Below the pieces are notes generated by a model, which had not been told where the DNA came from, ran no database searches, and saw nothing but the letters and a program-made list of their open reading frames with translations. Of a stretch of 64,000 bases of DNA, positions 357-58,905 are shown in pieces (the first letter of the stretch is position 1; each line of letters begins with the position of its first letter). Source of the DNA: Octopus sinensis (taxonomy: Eukaryota); contig NC_043000.1 in assembly GCF_006345805.1 (NCBI RefSeq), positions 123,566,001 to 123,630,000 on the forward strand. Direction: 5' to 3'. Position numbers and translations under genes: made by a program.

Positions 357-496
357 ATTTTCCATTTCGGCTCATTTTGAAACTGAACTGTCAACAGGTC
401 TTCATCTTGGTCAGTCCCCAACCTATGGTAATATAGCTTATTATACAGATTGGTGGTTGTTTCTGTGCCATCTGATTTGCCTTCAACAGGATATCT
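357..496 (-). CDS. PREP: PREP exon 6 ([46 protein letters not shown]); gene continues beyond window start
   Basis: [22 protein letters not shown] motif; ctgcag| acceptor and AT|gtaagt donor; 140 nt. Absent from the ORF track. Confidence 0.95.
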
Positions 497-730: not shown

Positions 731-832
731 GTTGTAAAACATTCCTTTGTTATCATGAGTCCATGCCATGCTTGAGAATTTCACATGCTTTAGTGTATCA
801 GGAAGATCCTCACCAGATGGAGCTTTTTTGAA
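731..832 (-). CDS. PREP: PREP exon 5 ([34 protein letters not shown])
   Basis: VKFSxMAWTHDxKGMFYN motif; ttcag| acceptor and AAC|gtaagt donor; 102 nt. Confidence 0.96.
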
Positions 833-2189: not shown

Positions 2190-2358
2190 CTGTATTGTGA
2201 TCCAGTCTGAACCACATTTACTGAGTCCATAAGCAAAATAGGAACCATCCTCAGAGAAGGCTGTGCCACTGATTGACAGGGTGCCATCTTCAGACAATGA
2301 GTTGGGGTCTAGAAACACACGGGGTTCACTTTTCAAGTTATCCTGAACATACAAAACA
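2190..2358 (-). CDS. PREP: PREP exon 4 ([26 protein letters not shown]...[23 protein letters not shown])
   Basis: Beta-propeller motifs FLDPN, FSEDG, AYGLS, GSDW; tttag| acceptor and CAG|gttggt donor; 169 nt. Confidence 0.96.
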
Positions 2359-3695: not shown

Positions 3696-3791
3696 CTCTG
3701 ATTCTGTAAGCCAGAATTGCAATAGTAATAATAGGATCCTCCATGCTCGGCAGGTGAGCTGTATTTAGCAAAGTTCCATTTTTCTGTCAAG
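3696..3791 (-). CDS. PREP: PREP exon 3 (LTEKWNFAKYSSPAEHGGSYYYYCNSGLQNQ)
   Basis: NxGLQNQ motif; ttcag| acceptor and AG|gtcagt donor; 96 nt, phases 2/2. Confidence 0.95.
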
Positions 3792-6677: not shown

Positions 6678-6805
6678 CTTTCTTGTATCTTCTGACGATG
6701 AGGACACTGCTCAATAAATGGGTGGCTAATAGAATTCTGAGCATCAACAAATGCAATGGTTTCTTTAGCGTCAGGATCTTCTAACCATCGGTAAGGATCT
6801 GAAAT
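6678..6805 (-). CDS. PREP: PREP exon 2 (ISDPYRWLEDPDAKETIAFVDAQNSISHPFIEQCPHRQKIQE)
   Basis: DPYxWLEDPD motif of the POP family; tctag|ATT acceptor and AG|gtttgt donor; 128 nt. Absent from the ORF track. Confidence 0.95.
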
Positions 6806-20362: not shown

Positions 20363-22060
20363 AGTCCAGTTTTTTTCATATTAAATTCCGATATAATCAC
20401 ATTTTAATAACATTCTAAAATGTATTTGTAGAAATTTCATTAAAAAAATGCTAATTTTTCTGAAAGACAAAGCCGACTCGTGTGAATTTTCCAAAACTCC
20501 CCACCCCAACCTTGGAAAAATCTTTGTCCGATATAGTCTTAATCTGCACCCTCTGAGGAGATTTGTAGAAAATTTCATGACAAAATATTCATTTTCTGGG
20601 AGTTGTGAGGAAACAAAGTCGGCGGGGAGCGCACTTGTGTAGGTCAGACTAAAATGGTGAGGTATATGTTTAAAGAATTAAAATTTCAGATGTTTAAAAC
20701 ATATACATGAAGAAATCTTGCAAAGTCAAAGAAAGATTACGGGAAAAGAAAGGGGCAACATCCCTAGCTTCCCCGCGGCTGAAAACACATCCGAAGAAAT
20801 TGGGTATTTTGGCGCACTAGATAATTTTCGACTCTAATTCTATAGGAAAGCCTCTGGAGTTTCTTGGATAAAGGTCTGTTCGGGGAGGACTGACTTGAGG
20901 TTGAACAACAAAGTCCCTTAAAAAGTGCGTATCATATCGCTACTAATTTAGTTTCAAGTCTTATTTCTTCATATTACCGAATAAAATTTTCTATATATAT
21001 GATGCATCTTGAATGCTAAATATAAACAAAATTAATACAAGGCTAATTAAAGAAAAAAATATTTTAAACTTTGTATTATAGCGGCAGGTTGCATCTCCGA
21101 GTAGTAATTACAATAAACGATGAATAAGGCATTTTTATGAACAAGGCTGCCTGTATCAGGAATCTCATATTTACCGTTAATAAAAGAGTAACAGCATTTT
21201 TAGTGAAAATGTTCGTTCTTTTATATAAATAAAACATTTGGGAAGAGAGAAATTAAATTAAGGGAAATAAGTTTCTCTATACTGTTCGGTCCACTCAGTT
21301 TCTCTATAATTATAGTCGAAAGGGGGGGGGGGACAGCAGACAGTTGAATGCCGGTTCGATAATTTAAAGCACTGCAGAGTGACATTACCATTCATTAGGA
21401 TCCAAAGTGGTTACTATATTACTAATTAACGCGCGTAAAGCATGGCAAAGAACTACTCGGTGCTACTACAAACGAAATATTGCCTAAATGTTAATAAAAT
21501 AATTAGAACGTTAGCAATAAGGAAATACAATTACTTATCGGGAAAAATTACAGCCTTCAGCTTATTCGACTTCATCCTAGTTGCGGAAAGGAAGAATATG
21601 AAGCTCATTGAAGACAAGATTATAATGGATTAGAACATCTATTAAAAGATATCAAATTTCTTATTGTCTGTAAGAGATTAATTAAATAATTAAATAAAAC
21701 TTTCGCCGAGGAAAAGCCTTCATTCTTGCACAAAGTAAACAATTTTTACGTTTATGCTGCTGGAAAAAAAATAGCGCCAACTTAAAGAAAGTGTATACTC
21801 GTGAGGAGTGGATGTGTGCATGCAGAACAGAGAAAAACATGAAATAACGGACTAAGAAACTAGGAACTACTTTAAGACATTTGAAGTACCACGAAAATAT
21901 ATATATATCAATAGGGAATGTAAGAGATTAATTATTAACGGGTTTCTTGTGAATGAAAGAGCGACCGGCATTTATGAAGCACCGACCCGGAAACCTAATT
22001 AGCAGCAGAGTAATGCACAATGGAAAAATGTGATTACATTTATTCACTTATGATACTCAC

Positions 22061-22126
22061 TTTGTGTCCGTGGTAATCATCAACTACTGATTCGTCACGA
22101 CGAGCTTTAGGATAAGAAAACTCCAT
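22061..22126 (-). CDS. PREP: Prolyl endopeptidase coding exon 1 (MEFSYPKARRDESVVDDYHGHK)
   Basis: Manual minus-strand translation. Matches the POP N-terminus (YP..RDE..V.DYHGHK). ATG context gatATGG; donor AAA|gtgagt; 66 nt, phase 0. Confidence 0.93.
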
Positions 22127-22430
22127 ATCGTAGCGGCAGGTTGGTTGCAGATGACACAAGAAAATGAAGACAATGCAGCTTAAATAATCCAGTGGAGTGC
22201 GCATTCGCTCTCAATCACTTCCGCTTGTTAAGCCATTCATTTTCTACATCTTCGTTGTAAAACGTCACTACTACACGTGCAGTGTGTTTTTGATACATAT
22301 GTATACATACACTGTGTGTATAGGTCAGGTATTAGTAGGTCTGACGCCGAGTTATTAACGTTGGTCAAAGAGGATTTGTGATGCAGATATTATCTTTTAG
22401 GCCACCACGTGACGTTGATGAATTTAAACC
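22127..22430 (-). promoter_or_regulatory. PREP promoter / 5' UTR region, CpG-retaining
   Basis: ETS-type GCGGAAGTG (22216-22224), E-box CACGTG (22274-22279), CRE half-site (22262-22267), overlapping CACGTGACGT (22406-22415), directly upstream of exon 1. TSS not determinable. Confidence 0.6.
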
Positions 22431-22781
22431 TGTATAACGACTTCTTACACTGGGTCACTCATTGTTTGTTCATAACCTTCTTTCGGACTGTGATTTAACA
22501 GCGCTTGTATTGATTTATTACATAAATATAACACGGTTTTTCGTCTGCTGTTACGTTCTGAGTTCAAATTCCGCCGAGGTTGACTTTGCCTTTCATCCTT
22601 TCGGGGTCGATTAAATAAGTACCAGTTACGCACTAGGGTCGATATAATCGACTTAACCCGTTTGTCTGTTCTTGTTTGTCCCCTCTATGTTTAGCCCCTT
22701 GTGGGTAGTAAAGAAATATTATTACATAAATATAATACTTCGCCTTTTTACGAGACAGTATGTGGTTTTCTATCAATTCTT

Positions 22782-24011: not shown

Positions 24012-27000
24012 GATTGTGTACCCCCGGTTACATTGTTCGAAAAAAAATCTAAGGTGGGGTTGATTATAGGTAGAATCAGAGCAGACATGAATGCTGTTGA
24101 AACACTCTTAAAAGAACTGAATGGCTCTGTTAGGGTGCTTAAAAAGACGAGTCGATCATGTTTGAAATGTTTTTAATGGTAAGAAGAGATGATTACGGTT
24201 GAAAGGGCCACGCCATTGACAGGAAGGAGAATTAGGCTTTTTAAGCACCCTAACATACTGACACCAAAATTAATGGCCAGCTTCTTGATGATGTCATCAA
24301 TCAGTTCGAAGAGTCCTGATGTTCATCGAAAACTTCCTAATTTGAAATAACGAGTCCTTTGTCAAATTTTAGGTTGACACCTACTACACGGAATTCAGTT
24401 CTCCTTAGTTAATCAATAAAAATCTAGGAATCACTTGAATTCACTTGCGGATTGCAATCAATAAAATTTCCACTTTTTGGCAAAGTCACGGATGAGAAGC
24501 AAGAATAAAAAAGGAATTATATTTTATGATACAATAATGATTGAGTTGACTGTTTACACTTTGCTTTTCTAATTGCTCTAATTGCTTATATTTTAAATTC
24601 AGTTTGTTCACCCATAATTCTATATGTGTAGTTCAATTAAAAATATTCTTTCTACAGTTGGCACAAGGTCTGAAATTTTAGGTGGGGGTCAAGTCAGTAA
24701 GATCTACCTCAGTGCTCAAATGGTACTTATTTTATTGACCCGGAAAAGATGAAAGGCAAAGTTGACCTTGGTGGAATTTGAACTCAGAACGTAAAGCAGA
24801 AAATATAAAGGTTAGTTATAAGAAAACTGTATTTTCTCCCCATTATTATTTGTGAAATTATTTTTGTGGGGAATGCGGAACTCAAACATCCTAGTAGTTC
24901 GAGGCATAGGAAAGGTTGGGAAACACTGAATTAGCTGAAACTGACAAGCGAGATGGTCCTATGAAGAGGGATTTGATATTGAAGCAATTATACTGCTTGT
25001 GTTTCCGGGCAGAACATTTTCTTGTACATAGCCCCACTTCAACTATTTGTCAGGAATGCATATATTATGCCAGATAAACTGATAAGCAAAATTATCCACT
25101 GTAAAGTAAATTTGCTTTCAGTTTGCCATATACTTGGTCTTTCAATTGTTCGTATTCAACCCCACATTTTTTTTTACTTGCCCTATTTATTTGGTTTAAT
25201 CATCCTTCTAATTTCTTAACAGTATTTGTGTTGATAGCTGTGTCACCTTCAACCTTGAAGTTTGTTGAGTACTCTCCATCAATTATTATTCACCTTGTTA
25301 AAGGCAGCAAGTGATTAGCACCAGACAAAATTCTTAGCAGCACCTAATCCAACTATACGTTCTGAGATTAAGTACTACCGAGGTCGACTTTGCCTGTCAT
25401 CCTTCGAGATCGATAAAATAAGTACTAGTTGGATACTTGGATCGTTGTAATCGATTTACTCCCTAATCTAAAATTGGTGGGTTTGTGTCAAACATTTGAA
25501 ACCATCATTTCATCTTGCCCCAAAACTTATTTTTTGAATACTCGCGAGGAAAGAGTGAGCAAGAGAAAATCTTTAAGCCGGCATTAAAAAGTAAAATTCA
25601 TACCACAAGAGAAATACATTAACTTGTTAATGTTTCTCTTACTTCCTCCAGTAGCATATCATTTTGTCAGTTGGAAATGGTCCAGAATATCTTTTTGCAG
25701 TTCTTTTACCATGTTATTTCGTAATATTTTGACTACTTGCAGCTTGCAGCCGATGGTGTATGAGTGCCAGCTTAACTGAGGAGTGGGGGAACAAGGGTGT
25801 AGGACCGCTCTGGGTGACGCTTTTATGTGGGGCGCCACTTTTGAACTTGTATATGTTTATATATTTCTTTACTACCCACAAAGGGGCTAAGCACAGAAGG
25901 GACAAACAAGGACAGACAAACGGATTAAGTCGATTATATCGCCCCCAGTGCGTAACTGGTACTTATTTAATCGACTCTGAAAGGATGAAAGGCAAAGTCG
26001 ACCTCGGCGGAATTTGAACTCAGAACGTAACGGCAGACGAAATACGGCTACGCATTTCGCCCGGCGTGCTAACGTTTCTGCCAGCTCACCGCCTTCTTGT
26101 TGTATATGCTTATACCCCGGGTGGAGTAAACTCGAAAGCTTCCCCGGACAATACACACCCAAGCTGCACCACTGTTTTTAAGTCAGAAGAAAAGGCAGCG
26201 TTCACGATGCGTTACACGGCTTCCGTGACTGTTTGGTGGGAAGGTGTCCTAAAGACTGAGACTTAGTCTAAATGCCTGCAACAGAGTGAACTCCGCTAAA
26301 GACACTGGAAGTACTAAATGGTGGTATTAAATTGGGAAACGGATTAAGTCTACCACCCTTGAAGGCCATAATGGGATTTAAACTCAGAATACAAACACCT
26401 TGAACAAATACCTATTTCTTTATTACCCACAAGGGGCTAAACACAGAGGGGACAAACAAGGACAGACATAGGTATTAAGTCGATTGCATCGACCCCAGTG
26501 CGTAACTGGTACTTAATTTATCGACCCCGAAAGGATGAAAGGCAAAGTCGACCTCGGCGGAATTTGAACTCACAACGTAACGACAGACGAAATACGGCTA
26601 CGCATTTCGTCCAGCGTGCTAGCGTTTCTGGTAGCTCGCCGCCTTCAACAAATACCATATAGCATCCAGGCTGATGTTGTTACAGGTTCCTCAGCCCACC
26701 ACCATCTTAGATTAGTTCGTTTTTATCTACTTCGAAAGAATGGTTGGCAAAATTGACTTCACCAAAATTTGAACTCAACGTGTAGAGAGGAGAAACAAAT
26801 ACTACGATGCATTCAGTCCGGCGCACTAATGACGCTTCAACCTTGCCTCCCAGCCTAAAGAGATTCAAGTTTGAACTGGTTATGGCCTTCAGAGGTCAAG
26901 GGGAAAGCCAATGTTGCCAAAATGTAATAAGTAGTACTTATGTGTTTTCTTTTACCAGCAAGCAACTGAACCTGTCTAGATGAGGAAGCATTGTCAAGTA

Positions 27001-44734: not shown

Positions 44735-46529
44735 AGAGAATGAATAATGAATATATAAACGAAGATATAACGGGTGAAATATTTTCTTTTCGTCGGTACA
44801 CGTACCGAGTTTTTTATACTACCAACCTTTCTTCGTGTCACCGATTTCACGTCGGTTGCGACGACGAGGGTCCCAGCTGATACGATCAACGGAACAGCTT
44901 GCTCGTAAAATTAACGTGCAAGTGGCTGAGCGCTCCACACACACGTGTACCCTTAACGCAGTTCTCGGGGAGATTCAGCGTGACACAGAGTGTGACAAGG
45001 TTGGCCCTTTGAAATACAGGTACTACTCACTTTTTGTCAGCTGAGTGGACTGGAGCAACGTGAAATAAAGTGTCTTGCTCAAGGACACAACACGCCGCCG
45101 GGAATTGAACTTACGACTCTAGGGTCATGAGCCGAATGCGTTTCTTGCAATTTCTTCTTAACGTTCATTTTGCATGCGTTCGTGTTCCGGAGATATTTTC
45201 TTGGTTCATTTGGAATGTAACTAATTTTGGATTGCCTTGAAAACGTTGTTTTAACATGTATTTTCGAATATATCAATTTGAATGATATTTTCTGTTTCTA
45301 AATGTATGTTGCTACAACAGATATATATATATATATCTGTTGTAGCAACATACATTTAGAAACAGAAAATATCATTCAAATGATATATTCGAAAATACAT
45401 GTTAAAACACGTTTTCAAGGCAATCCAAAATAGTTACATTCCAACAGATATATATATATATATATCTGTTGTAGCAACATACATTTAGAAACAGAAAATA
45501 TCATTCAAATGATATATTCGAAAATACATGTTAAAACAACGTTTTCAAGGCAATCCAAAATTAGTTACATTCCAAATGAACCAAGAAAATATCTCCAGAA
45601 CACGAATGCATGCAAAATGAACGTTAAGAAGAAATTGCAAGAAACGTTAGTTTAGTATTCAACTTTTAGTGGCGTCAGTGGATGACAAAAGAATAAACGA
45701 TAATTACAATAATCAGAAACATAGCGATTCCAGGTCACGACAATTAGTTAGCTATCTAGAACTAATAGACCTGGTTATTTCGTCATTACTAGAGTATGAA
45801 AGACAAAGTCGACCCCAACAGCGTTTGAATTCAGATCGTAAAGTCAGAAGAAATGCAATGACACAAAGCATTTCGTCCGGTGTGGTAACGATCCTGCCGG
45901 CTCGCCGCCTTACCTATTTCTTTACTACCCACAAGGGGCTAAACACAGAGAGGACAAACAAGTACAGACACATGGATTATATCGACTCCAGTGCCTAACT
46001 GGTACTTATTTAATCGACCCCGAAAAGATGAAAGGCAAAGTCGACCTCGGCGGAATTTGAACTCAGAACGTAACGGTAGACGAAATACCTATTTCTTTAC
46101 TACCCATAAGGGGCTAAACACAGAGGAGACAAACAAGGACAGACAGACGGATTAAGTCGATTATATCGACCCCAGTGCGTATCTGGTACTTATTTAATCG
46201 ACCCCGAAAGGATGAAAAGCAAAGTCGACCTCGGCGGAATTTGAACTCAGAACGTAGTGGCAGACGAAATACAGCTAAGCATTTCGCCCGGCGTGCTAGG
46301 GTTTCTGCCAGCTTGCCGCCTTACCTGGCTCCGTAATAATATTTACTGAAACATTGAAGATGATTAAATGTTTTGTCGCTGTATTTTAGTTTATGTTCAA
46401 CTGTAGTGAAGCTTGCTTAATATAAAACGTTTTTCTGCTTTGATTTTTCTTGCATGTTTTATTATTGTAATCATATAGAGTATTTTCACTATCGCGATCT
46501 CCAACTCTATGCTCAAGCTATGTTATTAA

Positions 46530-47679: not shown

Positions 47680-49873
47680 CCTCCAATGTCCATTCTACTG
47701 CATCTCGCCGTTTTAACCAAAGCAATAAGAATATGTCGCCTCAAATATAACTAAGTAGACACGTCTGCTTGTCATGGTTGAACTAGAACTAAACAACAAT
47801 AACAAAACTTGGCCATTGCTTTATGGATGGACACACTAACATTTTTTAACTTTATTTCCATAAATTGCCTATTTCAAGCTGACATGTTTTAAATGAATGT
47901 GTAGCGAGCGCTTGAGGGAAATTTCTCTTTGTTATATATACATAAATACGGACGTAGTAGATAACAGCTAGCCTTCGGCCGCCCTTTTGGACCCTGTTCT
48001 GTCCACTACTCTGATTAGTTGGTGTTGGCGTCACTTGTCTCTTGCTCTATTGCGCGCCTGTATGCAACCCAACCAATCGCAGCCTTCTGATAAGGTCACA
48101 TGAGACAGTCTCTTCTAAACCTTCTGTGAGCCGACTGTACCCTATAAAACTCTAGCTTCACATCGAGTCGAAGTCTTTCGGTTCAAGACCTTTTAATCCC
48201 TTGCCGCCACATTAACTCGATTTTTTAGTGGGGAGATGACCCAATTTTTGAATGGGGGTGAGATAATCAAAAAGGACCGCTACGTTTTATGCTAGTTATT
48301 CTGTTTTATTATTATTATTATTCGTTTATCCACTTAAATTTGGTGGATAGCTTTTAATGTATATTAGCAGCTTTATAGCAATACCAGTTTCCGTGACATT
48401 CCAGTCAATAATTATAAAATATATTTATTAATAAATCAACAAAAAATATTGCTTTATTGTCTATAATAATGTTGATTCAAAGATAATTAAATTAGATTTT
48501 AAAATACTAACTTGATTTCCTCAATAAATGTTTCACAGACACTACAACCAGAAATTCTGTTAGAAAGTTTGAGTTACATGTATATTTATTAACCTATTTC
48601 TTTATTACCCACAAGGGGCCAAACATAGAGGGGACAAACAAGGACAGACAAACGGATTAAGTCGATTATATCGACCCCAGTGCGTAACTGGTATTTAATT
48701 TATCGACCCCGAAAGGATGAAAGGCAAAGTCGACCTCGGCGGAATTTGAACTCAGAACGTAACGGTAGACGAAATATGGCTACGCATTTCGCCTGGCATG
48801 CTAACGTTTCTTCCGGCTTACAATCTTAAGTTTATTTAGTTATCATTATGAAACAAATAAGTGTTGTAAATAAAAACGATTTGTCAAAATGTTCCTTTAT
48901 TCTTCAATAAAGGGCAAAATATTGAAGATAATGATAGGGATAATGACTTCAAATTTAAATTCACGGTTTTTAGGTATTTCTGATGTTTTCTTTGGTAGTT
49001 TTATATATTAGAAATGTCTTTAATATTCATAGATTGATCAAATGCACATCGTAAAGAGAATAACTTCCCTTAAAGTTTGCTTGAGAAGGCTTAATACTGG
49101 AACATGTATATAAGTGATCTTGTGTTTTTTCAAGTGAAACCTGGATAAACATATTGTCATCAATGCGTCTGTAACTTTGCTTTTTCTTTCTCCTGCATTA
49201 GGTTGTTGGTCCTAGGCAAACCCATTTTTACCTTTGGGAGCAGATAGTCTATTTTAGTCTGGCCTCTGTCATTTGACTTGCCCAGCACGGGAGGTCCAGC
49301 CAAGAGCTTGAATTCTGCTGGCGTCCCTCTCAGACTCATTGAGGCATACAACCCACTATATTGCAATAAGGGCTGGGCCTTTTGGTGGACCTACATTTAA
49401 GGTATTTAATAAAATGTGGTCTGAGATTCTATTCAGAAATACAACCAAATATTTTCAATCGATTTTGACAGATCATCTCTGAGAAAATACGACAGAACCC
49501 AATCGTCGTTTTCGTCCGCTTTCTACATTCATTAAGTTCGATTTGTGATATGATGACGTCATAAGTGAACAATATTTCCATGGCAACGAAAATAAAATTT
49601 CATTAAACTACATGAATTTCATGTAAGATATGACTGTTTTAACGCGTCCAGATGAGGAATATATCAATGGGGATTTAACGGCTGAAAACCGAAATTCTTT
49701 TCTCTGCACATGTAATTCGTTTTTGAAATTATTTTATTATTTTGTTTCGAATCACTGTTTTCATTTTTTCGTATTACCTGTAGCTCACTCGCTTTTCATT
49801 TCTTTCTTTTTCTTTTTGTTAAGTTTAGTGCAGTAACGTGTAAGCTTTGAGAATGATGTTGAGGTGAAATATG

Positions 49874-50684: not shown

Positions 50685-51469
50685 AACTTCGCATTTAAAA
50701 CCCGGCTTGTTTTTTGTTTGTTTTTTGAGACATTTCTTTGGGGTGGGTGGGGAATGTGCGTTTTCTATGCCATCAAATATAGTTTTCCGTACAGATGCTG
50801 ACCATCAGTCCCGCCCAAGCCTGAAGGCACGAGTACTGATATAAGATATTAAAGACAGGTTAACGTACGTTGAATGCGGTGATGGTTTGCAGAGTAACAA
50901 AGAAAATGGCCGTCGTTCAAGGACAAACCGTGAATACCCATCCCATCTAAAGTATTCTTTTCTACTCTAGGCACAAGGCCCGAAATTTTGGGTGGGGGAG
51001 ACCAGTCGATTAATTCGACCCTAGTACGCAACTGGTACTTAATTTACCGACCCTGAAAAGATGAAAGGCAAAGTCGATCTCGGCGGGATTTGAACTTAGA
51101 AACTAAAGACAGACGAAATACCTATTTCTTTACTATCCACAAGGGGCTAAACACAGAGAGGACAAACAAGGACGGACAAACGGATTAAGTCGATTACATC
51201 GACCCCAGTGCGTGACTGGTACTTATTTAATCGACCCCGAGAGGATGAAAGGCAAAGTCGACCTCAGCGGAATTTGAACTCAGAACGTAACGGCAGACGA
51301 AAAACCGCTAAGCATTTCGCCCGACGTGCTTAACGTTTCTGCCAGCTCGCCGCCTTCTTCCCATCCAAATTAACAGACTGACATGAAATTGGTTGGCACA
51401 TTGCTGCCTCTAATACATTGATGGACGCCGATGTGGAAGTCGTCATTGTTAAGGGAATTACCCAAAGGA

Positions 51470-58646: not shown

Positions 58647-58905
58647 TATATATATTATATGTATTTCTTTACTACCCACAAGGGGCTAAACACAGAGGGG
58701 ACAAACAAGGACAGACAAACGGATTAAGTCGATTACATCGATCTCAGTGCGTAACTGGTACTTAATTTATCGACCCATAATATATACCTATTGGTTTAGG
58801 GAGATTTTATTTCCCCAAAATATTAGGTATTGAACCAGTGTTTTCTTAGATGTAATCATCCTTTTAAGAGATTAATATATCCTCTAATTAGGTTACACAC
58901 GCGCG

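What the first reader, a model, noticed from the sequence alone, without database searches (positions are those of the whole stretch)
22127..22204. In-frame upstream ATG gives PREP a signal-peptide-like 26-aa leader (possible secreted isoform)
Seen: an ATG at 22204 lies exactly 78 nt upstream of, and in frame with, the conserved start, with no stop between. It encodes MRTPLDYLSCIVFIFLCHLQPTCRYD-MEFSYPK, with a basic residue near the start and a 10-residue hydrophobic core (LSCIVFIFLC). An in-frame TGA lies two codons further up. The upstream ATG has weak context (cgaATGC) and the downstream one strong context (gatATGG). Established: animal S9A prolyl oligopeptidases are classically cytosolic and lack signal peptides. 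Inference: leaky scanning or alternative TSSs could give both a cytosolic and a secreted or membrane form, for example for neuropeptide, salivary or digestive processing. Caveats: the cleavage site is ambiguous (Pro at -3 if cut after Cys23), and the ATG sits among promoter motifs.
Basis: partly seen in the sequence, partly recalled or inferred. Interest (0 to 1): 0.72.

Follow-up and report, generated by a model that had tools for sequence, protein, structure and literature searches.

The report
Hydrophobic upstream-start leader on octopus PREP
An extra in-frame start codon would add 26 greasy residues to the front of an octopus peptide-cutting enzyme; it is real, already in public gene models and conserved among octopods, but nothing yet shows that it is made or sends the enzyme out of the cell.

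Summary
On the minus strand an ATG at 22204 lies 78 nt upstream of, and in frame with, the canonical PREP start at 22126. There is no stop between them, and a TGA lies two codons further up.

It is not new as an ORF. Public models for Octopus bimaculoides, O. sinensis, O. vulgaris (734 aa) and Argonauta hians (731 aa) already start there.

The ATG, the frame and a hydrophobic core (CIV[F/L]I[F/S]LC) are shared by Octopus and Argonauta. The substitution pattern looks weakly coding: omega about 0.4-0.5, lowest in the PREP frame, with third positions at the neutral rate. A cuttlefish PREP mRNA has no leader.

As a signal peptide the leader is poor. The n-region has net charge 0, the apolar core is 8-11 residues, no (-3,-1) cleavage site exists, and it is far too short for a membrane anchor. 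AlphaFold2 leaves residues 1-26 unstructured. A conserved ETS-type promoter motif ends 10 nt upstream of the ATG, so the ATG may lie outside most transcripts. I could obtain no TSS, Ribo-seq or peptide evidence.

Hydrophobic or TM-like leaders recur on PREP in Lingula and gastropods, two of them on transcript contigs.

Verdict: a real, octopod-conserved extension. Translation is plausible; secretion is unproven.

The parts
22202..22204 (-). Upstream in-frame ATG, in weak context (cgaATGc). It is the annotated start of XP_029635473.1 and its homologues.
22127..22204 (-). 78-nt leader encoding MRTPLDYLSCIVFIFLCHLQPTCRYD. The apolar core is YLSCIVFIFLC.
   Evidence: AF2 pLDDT below 50 for residues 1-26
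22124..22126 (-). Canonical PREP ATG in strong context (gatATGg). It aligns with the start of PREPs from other animals.
22061..22126 (-). Canonical coding part of exon 1 (MEFSYPKARRDESVVDDYHGHK). The GT donor is at 22060..22059.
22211..22213 (-). In-frame TGA that closes the frame two codons upstream of the leader ATG.
22215..22229 (-). ETS-type motif AACAAGCGGAAGTGA. It is the 5' edge of the only non-exonic block conserved between Octopus and Argonauta, and a probable core-promoter element.
22211..22240 (-). Short upstream ORF MNGLTSGSD*, in the PREP frame, ending at the TGA. It matters only if transcription starts further upstream. Argonauta has an analogous ORF, MWSCYAEGNKRK*.
6678..6805 (-). 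PREP exon 2
3696..3791 (-). PREP exon 3
2190..2358 (-). PREP exon 4
731..832 (-). PREP exon 5
357..496 (-). PREP exon 6. The gene continues beyond the window.

Best explanation
The 78 nt are the 5' end of PREP exon 1 in octopods. They form an in-frame upstream AUG plus open frame that arose in the octopod lineage after its split from cuttlefish-type cephalopods, and selection has kept it.

Shown:
- The ORF, its position, and its use as the annotated start in public models.
- Its conservation in Octopus and Argonauta.
- Its absence from a Sepia mRNA.
- Its lack of predicted structure.

Inferred:
- At least some transcripts include the upstream AUG.
- That AUG sits in a poor context and a strong-context AUG follows 78 nt later. 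Most ribosomes therefore scan past and make the ordinary cytosolic 708-aa enzyme.
- A minority start upstream and make a 734-aa proteoform with an unstructured, hydrophobic N-terminal extension.
- The extension resembles only the h-region of a signal peptide. If it targets at all, it most likely acts as an uncleaved ER signal or a weak membrane tether, not as a classical cleaved signal peptide. Secretion of a soluble enzyme is not implied.
For: 1. Public models from different annotation projects start at this ATG: XP_014785500.1 (= UniProt A0A0L8G0N4), XP_029635473.1, CAI9720929.1 and GAB1597703.1.

2. Between Octopus and Argonauta only exons and one block, window 22229..22048, can be aligned. 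Everything else that matches is repeats.

3. The leader ATGs align. The net indel between the leader ATG and the canonical ATG is 9 nt, while a 1-nt indel lies just upstream of the ATG.

4. Substitution pattern:
- Leader dS is 0.91 against 0.88 for the mature CDS; leader dN is 0.35, so omega is 0.38.
- Differences by codon position are 6/6/11.
- Over the ungapped 19 codons, pN/pS is 0.48 in the PREP frame against 0.79 and 1.19 in the other two frames.
- When the 17 substitutions are placed at random, the frame stays open in 54% of trials, pN/pS is this low in 9% of those, and the frame is both open and as hydrophobic in 6%.

5. The hydrophobic core is retained: CIVFIFLC in Octopus, CIVLISLC in Argonauta.

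6. Start contexts in Octopus are weak then strong.

7. Hydrophobic leaders contiguous with exon 1 also occur in Lingula and Lymnaea. TM-like leaders sit on transcript contigs L007, which has a 227-nt 5'UTR with an in-frame stop, and L012.

8. The conservation is not explained by RNA structure: folding z-scores are +1.3 and +0.5.
Against: - There are no transcript-end, ribosome or peptide data. The collection holds no octopus PREP products other than these genome models.
- Gene predictors take the longest ORF, so the annotations are not independent evidence of use.
- The ETS-type motif ends 10 nt upstream of the ATG. To my knowledge, such motifs usually sit at or just upstream of the TSS. If so, many transcripts may start inside the leader.
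- The statistical support is marginal: 23 codons, p about 0.05-0.09.
- In Argonauta the upstream ATG has A at -3, so the weak-then-strong context pattern is not conserved. An out-of-frame ATG also follows it by 7 nt.
- The leader has n-region net charge 0 and no cleavage site, and only 8 apolar residues in O. bimaculoides and Argonauta.
- The mature enzyme has the same single NXS/T sequon and about 11 Cys as leaderless Sepia PREP.
- Tenebrio molitor POP is a cautionary case: TargetP predicts a signal peptide, yet the enzyme is cytoplasmic by experiment (PMC9820350).
Confidence: 0.4

Rival explanations
1. Incidental ORF. The 78 nt are core promoter and 5'UTR, conserved for transcriptional or scanning reasons. 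The upstream ATG lies outside most or all mRNAs, or is ignored. The 734-aa models are over-extensions by longest-ORF gene prediction.
For: - In this DNA about 10% of random anchors have such an in-frame upstream ATG, and T-rich sequence often encodes hydrophobic peptides.
- About 12% of the PREP clusters listed carry extensions of 20 aa or more, of mixed character.
- The conserved block begins exactly at an ETS-type motif 10 nt upstream of the ATG.
- Signal-peptide features are poor.
- AlphaFold2 gives pLDDT of about 30 for residues 1-26.
- Sepia mRNA has a 66-nt 5'UTR with an in-frame stop and no upstream ATG.
- There is no proteomic support.
Against: - The ATG, the frame and the hydrophobic core all survive dS of about 0.9 between Octopus and Argonauta.
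- Third codon positions evolve at the neutral rate while first and second positions do not.
- The indel inside the ORF is a multiple of 3, while the one just outside is not.
- Hydrophobic leaders recur on PREP in other phyla.
Confidence: 0.35
2. Translated but without a targeting role. The upstream AUG is used at a low level, and the extension is neutral, rapidly degraded, or serves only to tune how much canonical enzyme is made, like an in-frame uORF.
For: - The first AUG is in weak context and the extension is unstructured.
- Constraint is relaxed, with omega about 0.4-0.5 against 0.06 for the enzyme.
- Short uORFs end just before the leader ATG in both genera.
- A general survey argues that most translated N-terminal extensions are non-functional (PMC11623489, abstract).
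Against: Hydrophobicity is retained through the F-to-L and F-to-S changes in Argonauta. The parallel hydrophobic leaders in Lingula and gastropods point to a property of the peptide rather than of the act of translation.
Confidence: 0.15
3. One reading: a classical cleaved ER signal peptide that yields a soluble secreted PREP for neuropeptide, salivary or digestive processing.
For: The apolar core of 8-11 residues near the N-terminus falls within the h-region range. PREP was listed in an Octopus vulgaris ink proteome (PMC10142993).
Against: - No residue pair satisfies the (-3,-1) rule: Pro is at -3 or -2 for the Thr22 and Cys23 sites, and Phe is at -3 for Cys17.
- The n-region net charge is 0 in all four species.
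- The ink identification rests on 1 peptide and 2 PSMs, in a sample full of cytosolic proteins. The leader peptide there is only an in-silico digest product.
Confidence: 0.08

Closest known systems
Annotated octopod PREP models: XP_014785500.1 / A0A0L8G0N4 (O. bimaculoides), XP_029635473.1 (O. sinensis isoform X2), CAI9720929.1 (O. vulgaris), GAB1597703.1 (Argonauta hians)
   Same: The same gene and the same leader. The window's exons 1-6 are identical to XP_029635473.1 residues 1-259.
   Different: None as sequence. These are predictions only, and no record or paper that I found comments on the leader's nature.
Lingula anatina PREP isoforms X2/X3 (P0142, P0141)
   Same: - A 32-aa leader from an in-frame upstream ATG that is contiguous with exon 1.
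- A hydrophobic core, LCIVFFLVFL.
- 'CIVF' lies 21 residues before YPKARRDES, exactly as in octopus.
- The local DNA match is 15/17, shuffle p about 0.0035.
   Different: - The Lingula n-region is strongly positive (+3), so it is a much better signal-peptide candidate.
- Cuttlefish, chiton, scallop and Owenia lack any leader, so common descent is doubtful.
Gastropod and plankton PREPs with TM-like leaders: Lymnaea P0168, Plakobranchus P0225, Logan transcript P0169 (L007), JGI metatranscriptome P0147 (L012), P0153, P0158
   Same: An N-terminal hydrophobic extension placed directly in front of the canonical PREP start. Two of them sit on transcript contigs.
   Different: - P0225, P0147, P0153, P0158 and P0169 have 16-22 apolar residues and a negative simple-sum insertion energy (-1.0 to -3.8), so they are plausible type II anchors.
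- Lymnaea P0168 has 16 apolar residues but a best 19-mer of +4.8.
- The octopod leader has 8-11 apolar residues and +7 to +11.
- There is no sequence similarity to the octopus leader.
Canonical cytosolic PREP/POP (human P48147; porcine enzyme, P0179)
   Same: The mature enzyme is about 62% identical, with both Pfam domains and the catalytic Ser motif.
   Different: About 710 aa with no leader. It is cytoplasmic (PMC9820350).
S9B relatives DPP4 and FAP (type II membrane ectopeptidases)
   Same: What a membrane-tethered PREP would work like: a prolyl-specific S9 peptidase held by an uncleaved N-terminal hydrophobic segment. DPP4 has a TM helix at residues 7-27 (PMC9820350).
   Different: A different subfamily. 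They have a genuine 20-residue TM helix, which the octopod leader lacks.
Proteoforms with different localisation made by alternative in-frame initiation (e.g. neuronal pentraxin receptor, 10.1101/2024.02.16.580719; Arabidopsis JASON, PMC5853252)
   Same: The proposed mechanism: two in-frame starts on one mRNA, one of which adds a hydrophobic targeting segment (abstracts).
   Different: Those cases have experimental support. This one has none.

Membership tests
S9A prolyl oligopeptidase (PREP) | Peptidase_S9_N propeller plus Peptidase_S9 catalytic domain, with the GxSxGG catalytic Ser motif | tested here: met
   The window's exons equal XP_029635473.1 residues 1-259. That protein's cluster carries PF02897 and PF00326. 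The motif is HGQSNGG. AF2 gives pTM 0.86.
Cleaved Sec-type ER signal peptide | Positively charged n-region | tested here: not met
   Net charge is 0 in O. sinensis, O. bimaculoides and Argonauta. R2 is offset by D6, and Argonauta's MQNALN has no charged residue.
Cleaved Sec-type ER signal peptide | h-region of about 7-15 apolar residues | tested here: met
   11 residues (YLSCIVFIFLC) in O. sinensis and O. vulgaris; 8 (CIVFIFLC, CIVLISLC) in O. bimaculoides and Argonauta. The 10-residue KD mean is 3.06, within the top 2-3% of random open 26-codon ORFs in the window.
Cleaved Sec-type ER signal peptide | c-region with small uncharged residues at -3 and -1, and no Pro from -3 to +1 | tested here: not met
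   Read directly from the sequence HLQPTCRYDMEFS. Cleavage after T22 puts Q at -3 and P at -2. After C23, P is at -3. After C17, F is at -3. After S30, E is at -3.
Cleaved Sec-type ER signal peptide | Positive call by a trained predictor (SignalP, TargetP, DeepTMHMM) | not testable with these tools
Type II signal anchor / transmembrane helix | About 18-25 apolar residues with favourable membrane-insertion energy | tested here: not met
   The best 19-mer by simple sum of the Hessa scale (values from memory) is +7.4, +8.7 and +10.8 kcal/mol in the octopods. The five TM-like gastropod and plankton leaders give -1.0 to -3.8.
Alternative in-frame initiation giving two proteoforms | In-frame upstream AUG, open frame, with a weaker context than the downstream AUG | tested here: inconclusive
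   Met in Octopus: cgaAUGc against gatAUGg. In Argonauta both AUGs have A at -3, and an out-of-frame AUG lies 7 nt after the first.
Alternative in-frame initiation giving two proteoforms | Upstream AUG present in the mature mRNA and used by ribosomes | not testable with these tools
   No octopus transcript contigs or Ribo-seq data could be reached. A conserved ETS-type motif 10 nt upstream makes the TSS position critical.
Alternative in-frame initiation giving two proteoforms | AUG and frame conserved in related species, with a coding-type substitution pattern | tested here: met
   Found in Octopus x3 and Argonauta. Omega is 0.38-0.48, lowest in the PREP frame. Support is marginal (p about 0.05-0.09). 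Absent in Sepia.
Mitochondrial presequence | Arg-rich amphipathic N-terminus without acidic residues | tested here: not met
   By composition only: the first 20 residues hold one Arg and one Asp plus a contiguous apolar core. The extended Xenopus, Bombina and Centruroides models look different, being Arg-rich.

The most novel reading that the evidence does not exclude
PREP, the textbook cytosolic prolyl oligopeptidase, has genetically encoded ER-targeted or membrane-tethered proteoforms in lophotrochozoans. They are made from an in-frame upstream start in exon 1: short signal-like leaders in octopods and Lingula, full type II anchors in gastropods. In octopods one gene would then supply both a cytosolic and an extracytosolic or ecto-PREP, for example for neuropeptide turnover. 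That would give a sequence-level explanation for 'membrane-bound PREP' activity in at least these animals.
Probability: 0.2. Interest if true: 0.6.

Novelty: new member of a known kind. Interest (0 to 1): 0.35.

Why it matters
PREP is studied as a cytosolic neuropeptide-degrading enzyme and drug target, and how it meets extracellular peptides is an old puzzle. A leader that puts part of the enzyme into the secretory pathway or onto membranes would change how PREP is read in cephalopod nervous and glandular tissue. Together with the gastropod forms, it would show that membrane anchoring of S9A enzymes evolved repeatedly.

If the leader is only an over-extended gene model, four public protein records and the work built on them carry 23-26 spurious residues. 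One example is the 'bioactive peptide' TPLDYLNCIVFIFLCHLQPTCR listed in PMC10142993.

Tried and rejected
1. A protein search with the 48-aa leader plus exon 1 found nothing, and a 259-aa query returned only partial proteins. The search appears to keep only hits up to about 1.75 times the query length. That is my inference from the hit lengths, so these two results say nothing about octopus. A 446-aa chimeric query solved the problem.

2. I looked for octopus transcripts. P0240 is not on record as a gene product, which implies a longer isoform X1 that I never saw. The 708-aa canonical-start versions of all four octopod proteins are absent from the collection. So there is no transcript-end evidence.

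3. By eye the Sepia 5'UTR resembled the 3' half of the leader. Local alignment against shuffles gives p = 0.8, so I rejected this.

4. The leader peptide in the octopus ink proteome paper looked like MS evidence. It is an in-silico tryptic digest, and PREP itself rests on 1 peptide and 2 PSMs.

5. RNA structure as the cause of conservation: z-scores are +1.3 and +0.5, so rejected.

6. A TATA-like TATTTAAG and an Inr-like TTCATT lie inside the leader. The TATA-like element is not conserved in Argonauta or O. bimaculoides, and one Inr match is expected by chance in 78 nt. I give them no weight.

7. A splice acceptor at ...tttaag|CTGC is not conserved (AAA in O. bimaculoides), so rejected.

8. 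A head-to-head IBR-domain gene, as in Lingula and Owenia, would have defined a bidirectional promoter. tblastn found no match in the window.

9. Pfam on the ten longest ORFs and Rfam on the whole window found nothing.

10. Sequon and cysteine counts are the same in octopods and leaderless Sepia, so they are uninformative.

Full report
**What is there**

On the minus strand the window carries the first six exons of a prolyl endopeptidase (PREP, family S9A) gene. Their coordinates are 22204/22126..22061, 6805..6678, 3791..3696, 2358..2190, 832..731 and 496..357. Intron 1 is about 15 kb.

- ATG at 22204..22202 and canonical ATG at 22126..22124, 78 nt apart, in frame, with no stop between.
- TGA at 22213..22211, two codons upstream.
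- Contexts cgaATGc and gatATGg.
- Encoded leader MRTPLDYLSCIVFIFLCHLQPTCRYD.

Spliced, the window's exons equal residues 1-259 of XP_029635473.1, O. sinensis PREP isoform X2. The O. vulgaris model differs at one residue in that stretch.

**The ORF is already public**

The 734-aa models of O. bimaculoides (XP_014785500.1, the same sequence as UniProt A0A0L8G0N4), O. sinensis and O. vulgaris all begin at this upstream ATG. So does the 731-aa model of Argonauta hians. The ORF is therefore not a new observation.

What nobody seems to have discussed is what the extension is. Four literature searches found no such discussion. One paper lists the leader's tryptic peptide as a predicted 'bioactive peptide' (PMC10142993). 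Its methods show this is an in-silico digest, and PREP itself was identified in ink by 1 peptide and 2 PSMs. That is no evidence for translation of the leader or for secretion.

**Is it more than chance in one genome?**

In the window's own DNA, 9.8% of random anchors have an open in-frame ATG 15-40 codons upstream. Only 0.3% also reach the leader's hydrophobicity: the leader's 10-residue Kyte-Doolittle mean is 3.06, and the threshold used was 3.0. That is uncommon for one gene. Across a whole genome it would still arise by chance several dozen times.

**Comparative evidence within cephalopods**

Between Octopus and Argonauta synonymous divergence in PREP is high, with dS 0.88. Nothing aligns outside exons and repeats except one block, window 22229..22048. 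That block begins at an ETS-type motif (AACAAGCGGAAGTGA) and runs through the leader and exon 1.

In the gapped alignment:
- The two leader ATGs align.
- The net length difference between the leader ATG and the canonical ATG is 9 nt.
- A 1-nt indel sits just upstream of the ATG.

Substitution pattern:
- For the leader, dS is 0.91, dN 0.35 and omega 0.38. The mature enzyme has omega 0.057.
- Differences by codon position in the leader are 6/6/11.
- Over the ungapped 19 codons, pN/pS is 0.48 in the PREP frame and 0.79 and 1.19 in the other two frames.
- When the 17 substitutions are placed at random, the frame stays open in 54% of trials. pN/pS is this low in 9% of those. The frame is both open and as hydrophobic in 6%.

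The apolar core survives as CIVLISLC in Argonauta. These results all point the same way, but they rest on 23 codons and one deep comparison. The three Octopus species differ at only 2 of 78 nt, against 6-8% in the intron.

A Sepia esculenta mRNA contig encodes a 708-aa PREP that is 81% identical. The run is SRR19578112, identified through PMC10141105. Its 66-nt 5'UTR has an in-frame TGA, no upstream ATG, and no detectable similarity to the leader. The leader is therefore octopod-specific among the cephalopods I could reach.

**How good a targeting signal is it?**

| Criterion | Result |
|---|---|
| Apolar core | 11 residues in O. sinensis and O. vulgaris; 8 in O. bimaculoides and Argonauta. 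Within the h-region range. |
| n-region charge | Net 0 in all octopods. |
| (-3,-1) cleavage site | None: Pro or Gln at -3 or -2 for Thr22 and Cys23; Phe at -3 for Cys17. |
| Membrane insertion energy, best 19-mer | +7 to +11 kcal/mol by a simple sum of the Hessa scale (scale values from memory), so not a membrane anchor. |
| AlphaFold2 | Confident for the enzyme (pTM 0.86). Residues 1-26 have pLDDT of about 30 and no secondary structure. |

The AlphaFold2 result fits a targeting peptide and a non-protein equally well. I could not run SignalP, TargetP or DeepTMHMM.

A published cautionary case is Tenebrio molitor POP. TargetP predicts a signal peptide for it, yet the enzyme is cytoplasmic by experiment (PMC9820350).

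**The promoter problem**

The only CGGAAGTG in the 64 kb sits at 22223..22216 and is conserved in Argonauta. It ends 10 nt upstream of the leader ATG. To my knowledge, such motifs typically lie at or just upstream of transcription start sites in TATA-less promoters. The ATG could therefore be at the very 5' end of the mRNA or outside it.

If transcription starts further upstream, the mRNA also carries short uORFs. One of them is in the PREP frame and ends at the TGA two codons before the leader ATG: MNGLTSGSD* in Octopus and, analogously, MWSCYAEGNKRK* in Argonauta.

I could not obtain any octopus transcript 5' end. This is the decisive gap.

**Context outside cephalopods**

Among the PREP clusters returned, most start about 23-25 residues before the conserved DPYxWLE motif. 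A minority carry extensions.
- **Lingula (isoforms X2 and X3):** a 32-aa leader, contiguous with exon 1. It has a +3 n-region and the core LCIVFFLVFL.
- **Lymnaea:** a 32-aa leader, also contiguous with exon 1.
- **Plakobranchus, one Logan transcript (L007) and three JGI metatranscriptome proteins:** 16-22 apolar residues with negative insertion energy, so these are plausible type II anchors. L007 has a 227-nt 5'UTR with an in-frame stop, so the extended ORF sits on a real mRNA.
- **Owenia, a chiton and a scallop:** no leader.
- **Extended vertebrate and arthropod models:** Arg-rich rather than hydrophobic.

Hydrophobic leaders in at least three lophotrochozoan lineages are more than the 0.3% per-gene chance rate predicts. 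This raises the prior that the octopod leader means something.

One oddity remains. 'CIVF' in Lingula lies exactly 21 residues before YPKARRDES, as in octopus, and the DNA matches 15/17 (shuffle p about 0.0035). Because cuttlefish, chiton, scallop and annelid lack a leader, I treat this as probable coincidence and leave it unexplained.

**Judgement**

The extension is a real feature conserved among octopods. I put about 0.4 on the reading that it is translated from a subset of initiation events and acts as a short hydrophobic, probably uncleaved, ER or membrane-association signal. I put about 0.35 on it being promoter or 5'UTR sequence with an incidental ORF that gene predictors over-extended. 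Translated but functionless or merely regulatory gets 0.15.

It is a new member of a known kind, an in-frame alternative-start N-terminal extension, on an enzyme where such a thing would be of some interest. Interest is moderate to low until a TSS map or a peptide exists.

Noticed in passing
window 22215-22229 (minus strand); L001 2977-2991: ETS-type motif AACAAGCGGAAGTGA. It holds the only CGGAAGTG in the 64 kb, is identical in Argonauta, and marks the 5' edge of the only conserved non-exonic block. It is probably the core promoter element of PREP.
   Followed up: partly
window 22211-22240 (minus strand); L001 about 2953-2991: Short uORFs in the PREP frame that stop 2-3 codons before the leader ATG: MNGLTSGSD* in Octopus and MWSCYAEGNKRK* in Argonauta. 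If they are transcribed, reinitiation after them could influence which AUG is used.
   Followed up: no
L004 1242-1337 (Lingula) against window 22127-22177: The Lingula PREP leader shares 'CIVF', and 15/17 nt (TGCATTGTYTTCWTTTT), with the octopus leader at exactly the same distance from the YP codon (shuffle p about 0.0035). The same region is unrelated in Sepia, chiton, scallop and Owenia. Unexplained; possibly coincidence.
   Followed up: partly
L007 228-395; L012 13-; proteins P0147, P0153, P0158, P0169, P0225, P0168: Gastropod and marine-plankton PREPs carry 32-56-aa N-terminal leaders. In five of the six the leader is a 16-22-residue TM-like segment. Two sit on transcript contigs. I found no literature on a possible type II membrane-anchored S9A PREP subgroup.
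   Followed up: partly
window about 22560-22700 (minus strand); also 26414-26553, 46080-46216, 48588-48735, 51113-51279, 58663-58773: A tRNA-derived SINE-like element lies about 350-500 nt upstream of PREP. It cannot be aligned at that position in O. bimaculoides. The other listed coordinates are copies of a repeat family also found in Argonauta PREP introns and flanks. I did not check whether these copies and the upstream element belong to the same family.
   Followed up: no
proteins P0240, P0121, P0242 (octopods) and P0128 (Sepia), catalytic Ser motif: Cephalopod PREPs read HG[Q/H]SNGG where 114 of 121 other PREPs in the set read GGSNGG. Q occurs only in the four octopods and H only in Sepia.
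   Followed up: no
L004 1-720, L005 1-3479, L008 1-900: An IBR-domain (RBR-type) gene lies head-to-head within about 500-600 bp of PREP in both Lingula and Owenia, which is conserved microsynteny. tblastn found no match in the octopus window.
   Followed up: partly
L001 about 2500-2900: About three tandem copies of a roughly 130-150-nt unit lie immediately upstream of the Argonauta PREP promoter block. Octopus has unrelated sequence there, with CACGTG and TGACGT motifs at window about 22260-22420.
   Followed up: no
O. sinensis PREP gene (this window and beyond): Isoform X2 (734 aa) is not the product on record for the gene, so isoform X1 must be longer. It never appeared in the searches and its extra sequence is unknown. 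tblastn on the O. vulgaris locus shows no duplicated PREP exons.
   Followed up: partly
proteins P0182, P0202, P0204, P0212, P0229, P0230, P0006: Several vertebrate and arthropod PREP models carry 30-60-aa Arg-rich N-terminal extensions that look like mitochondrial presequences or translated GC-rich 5'UTRs. It is unclear whether they are real.
   Followed up: no
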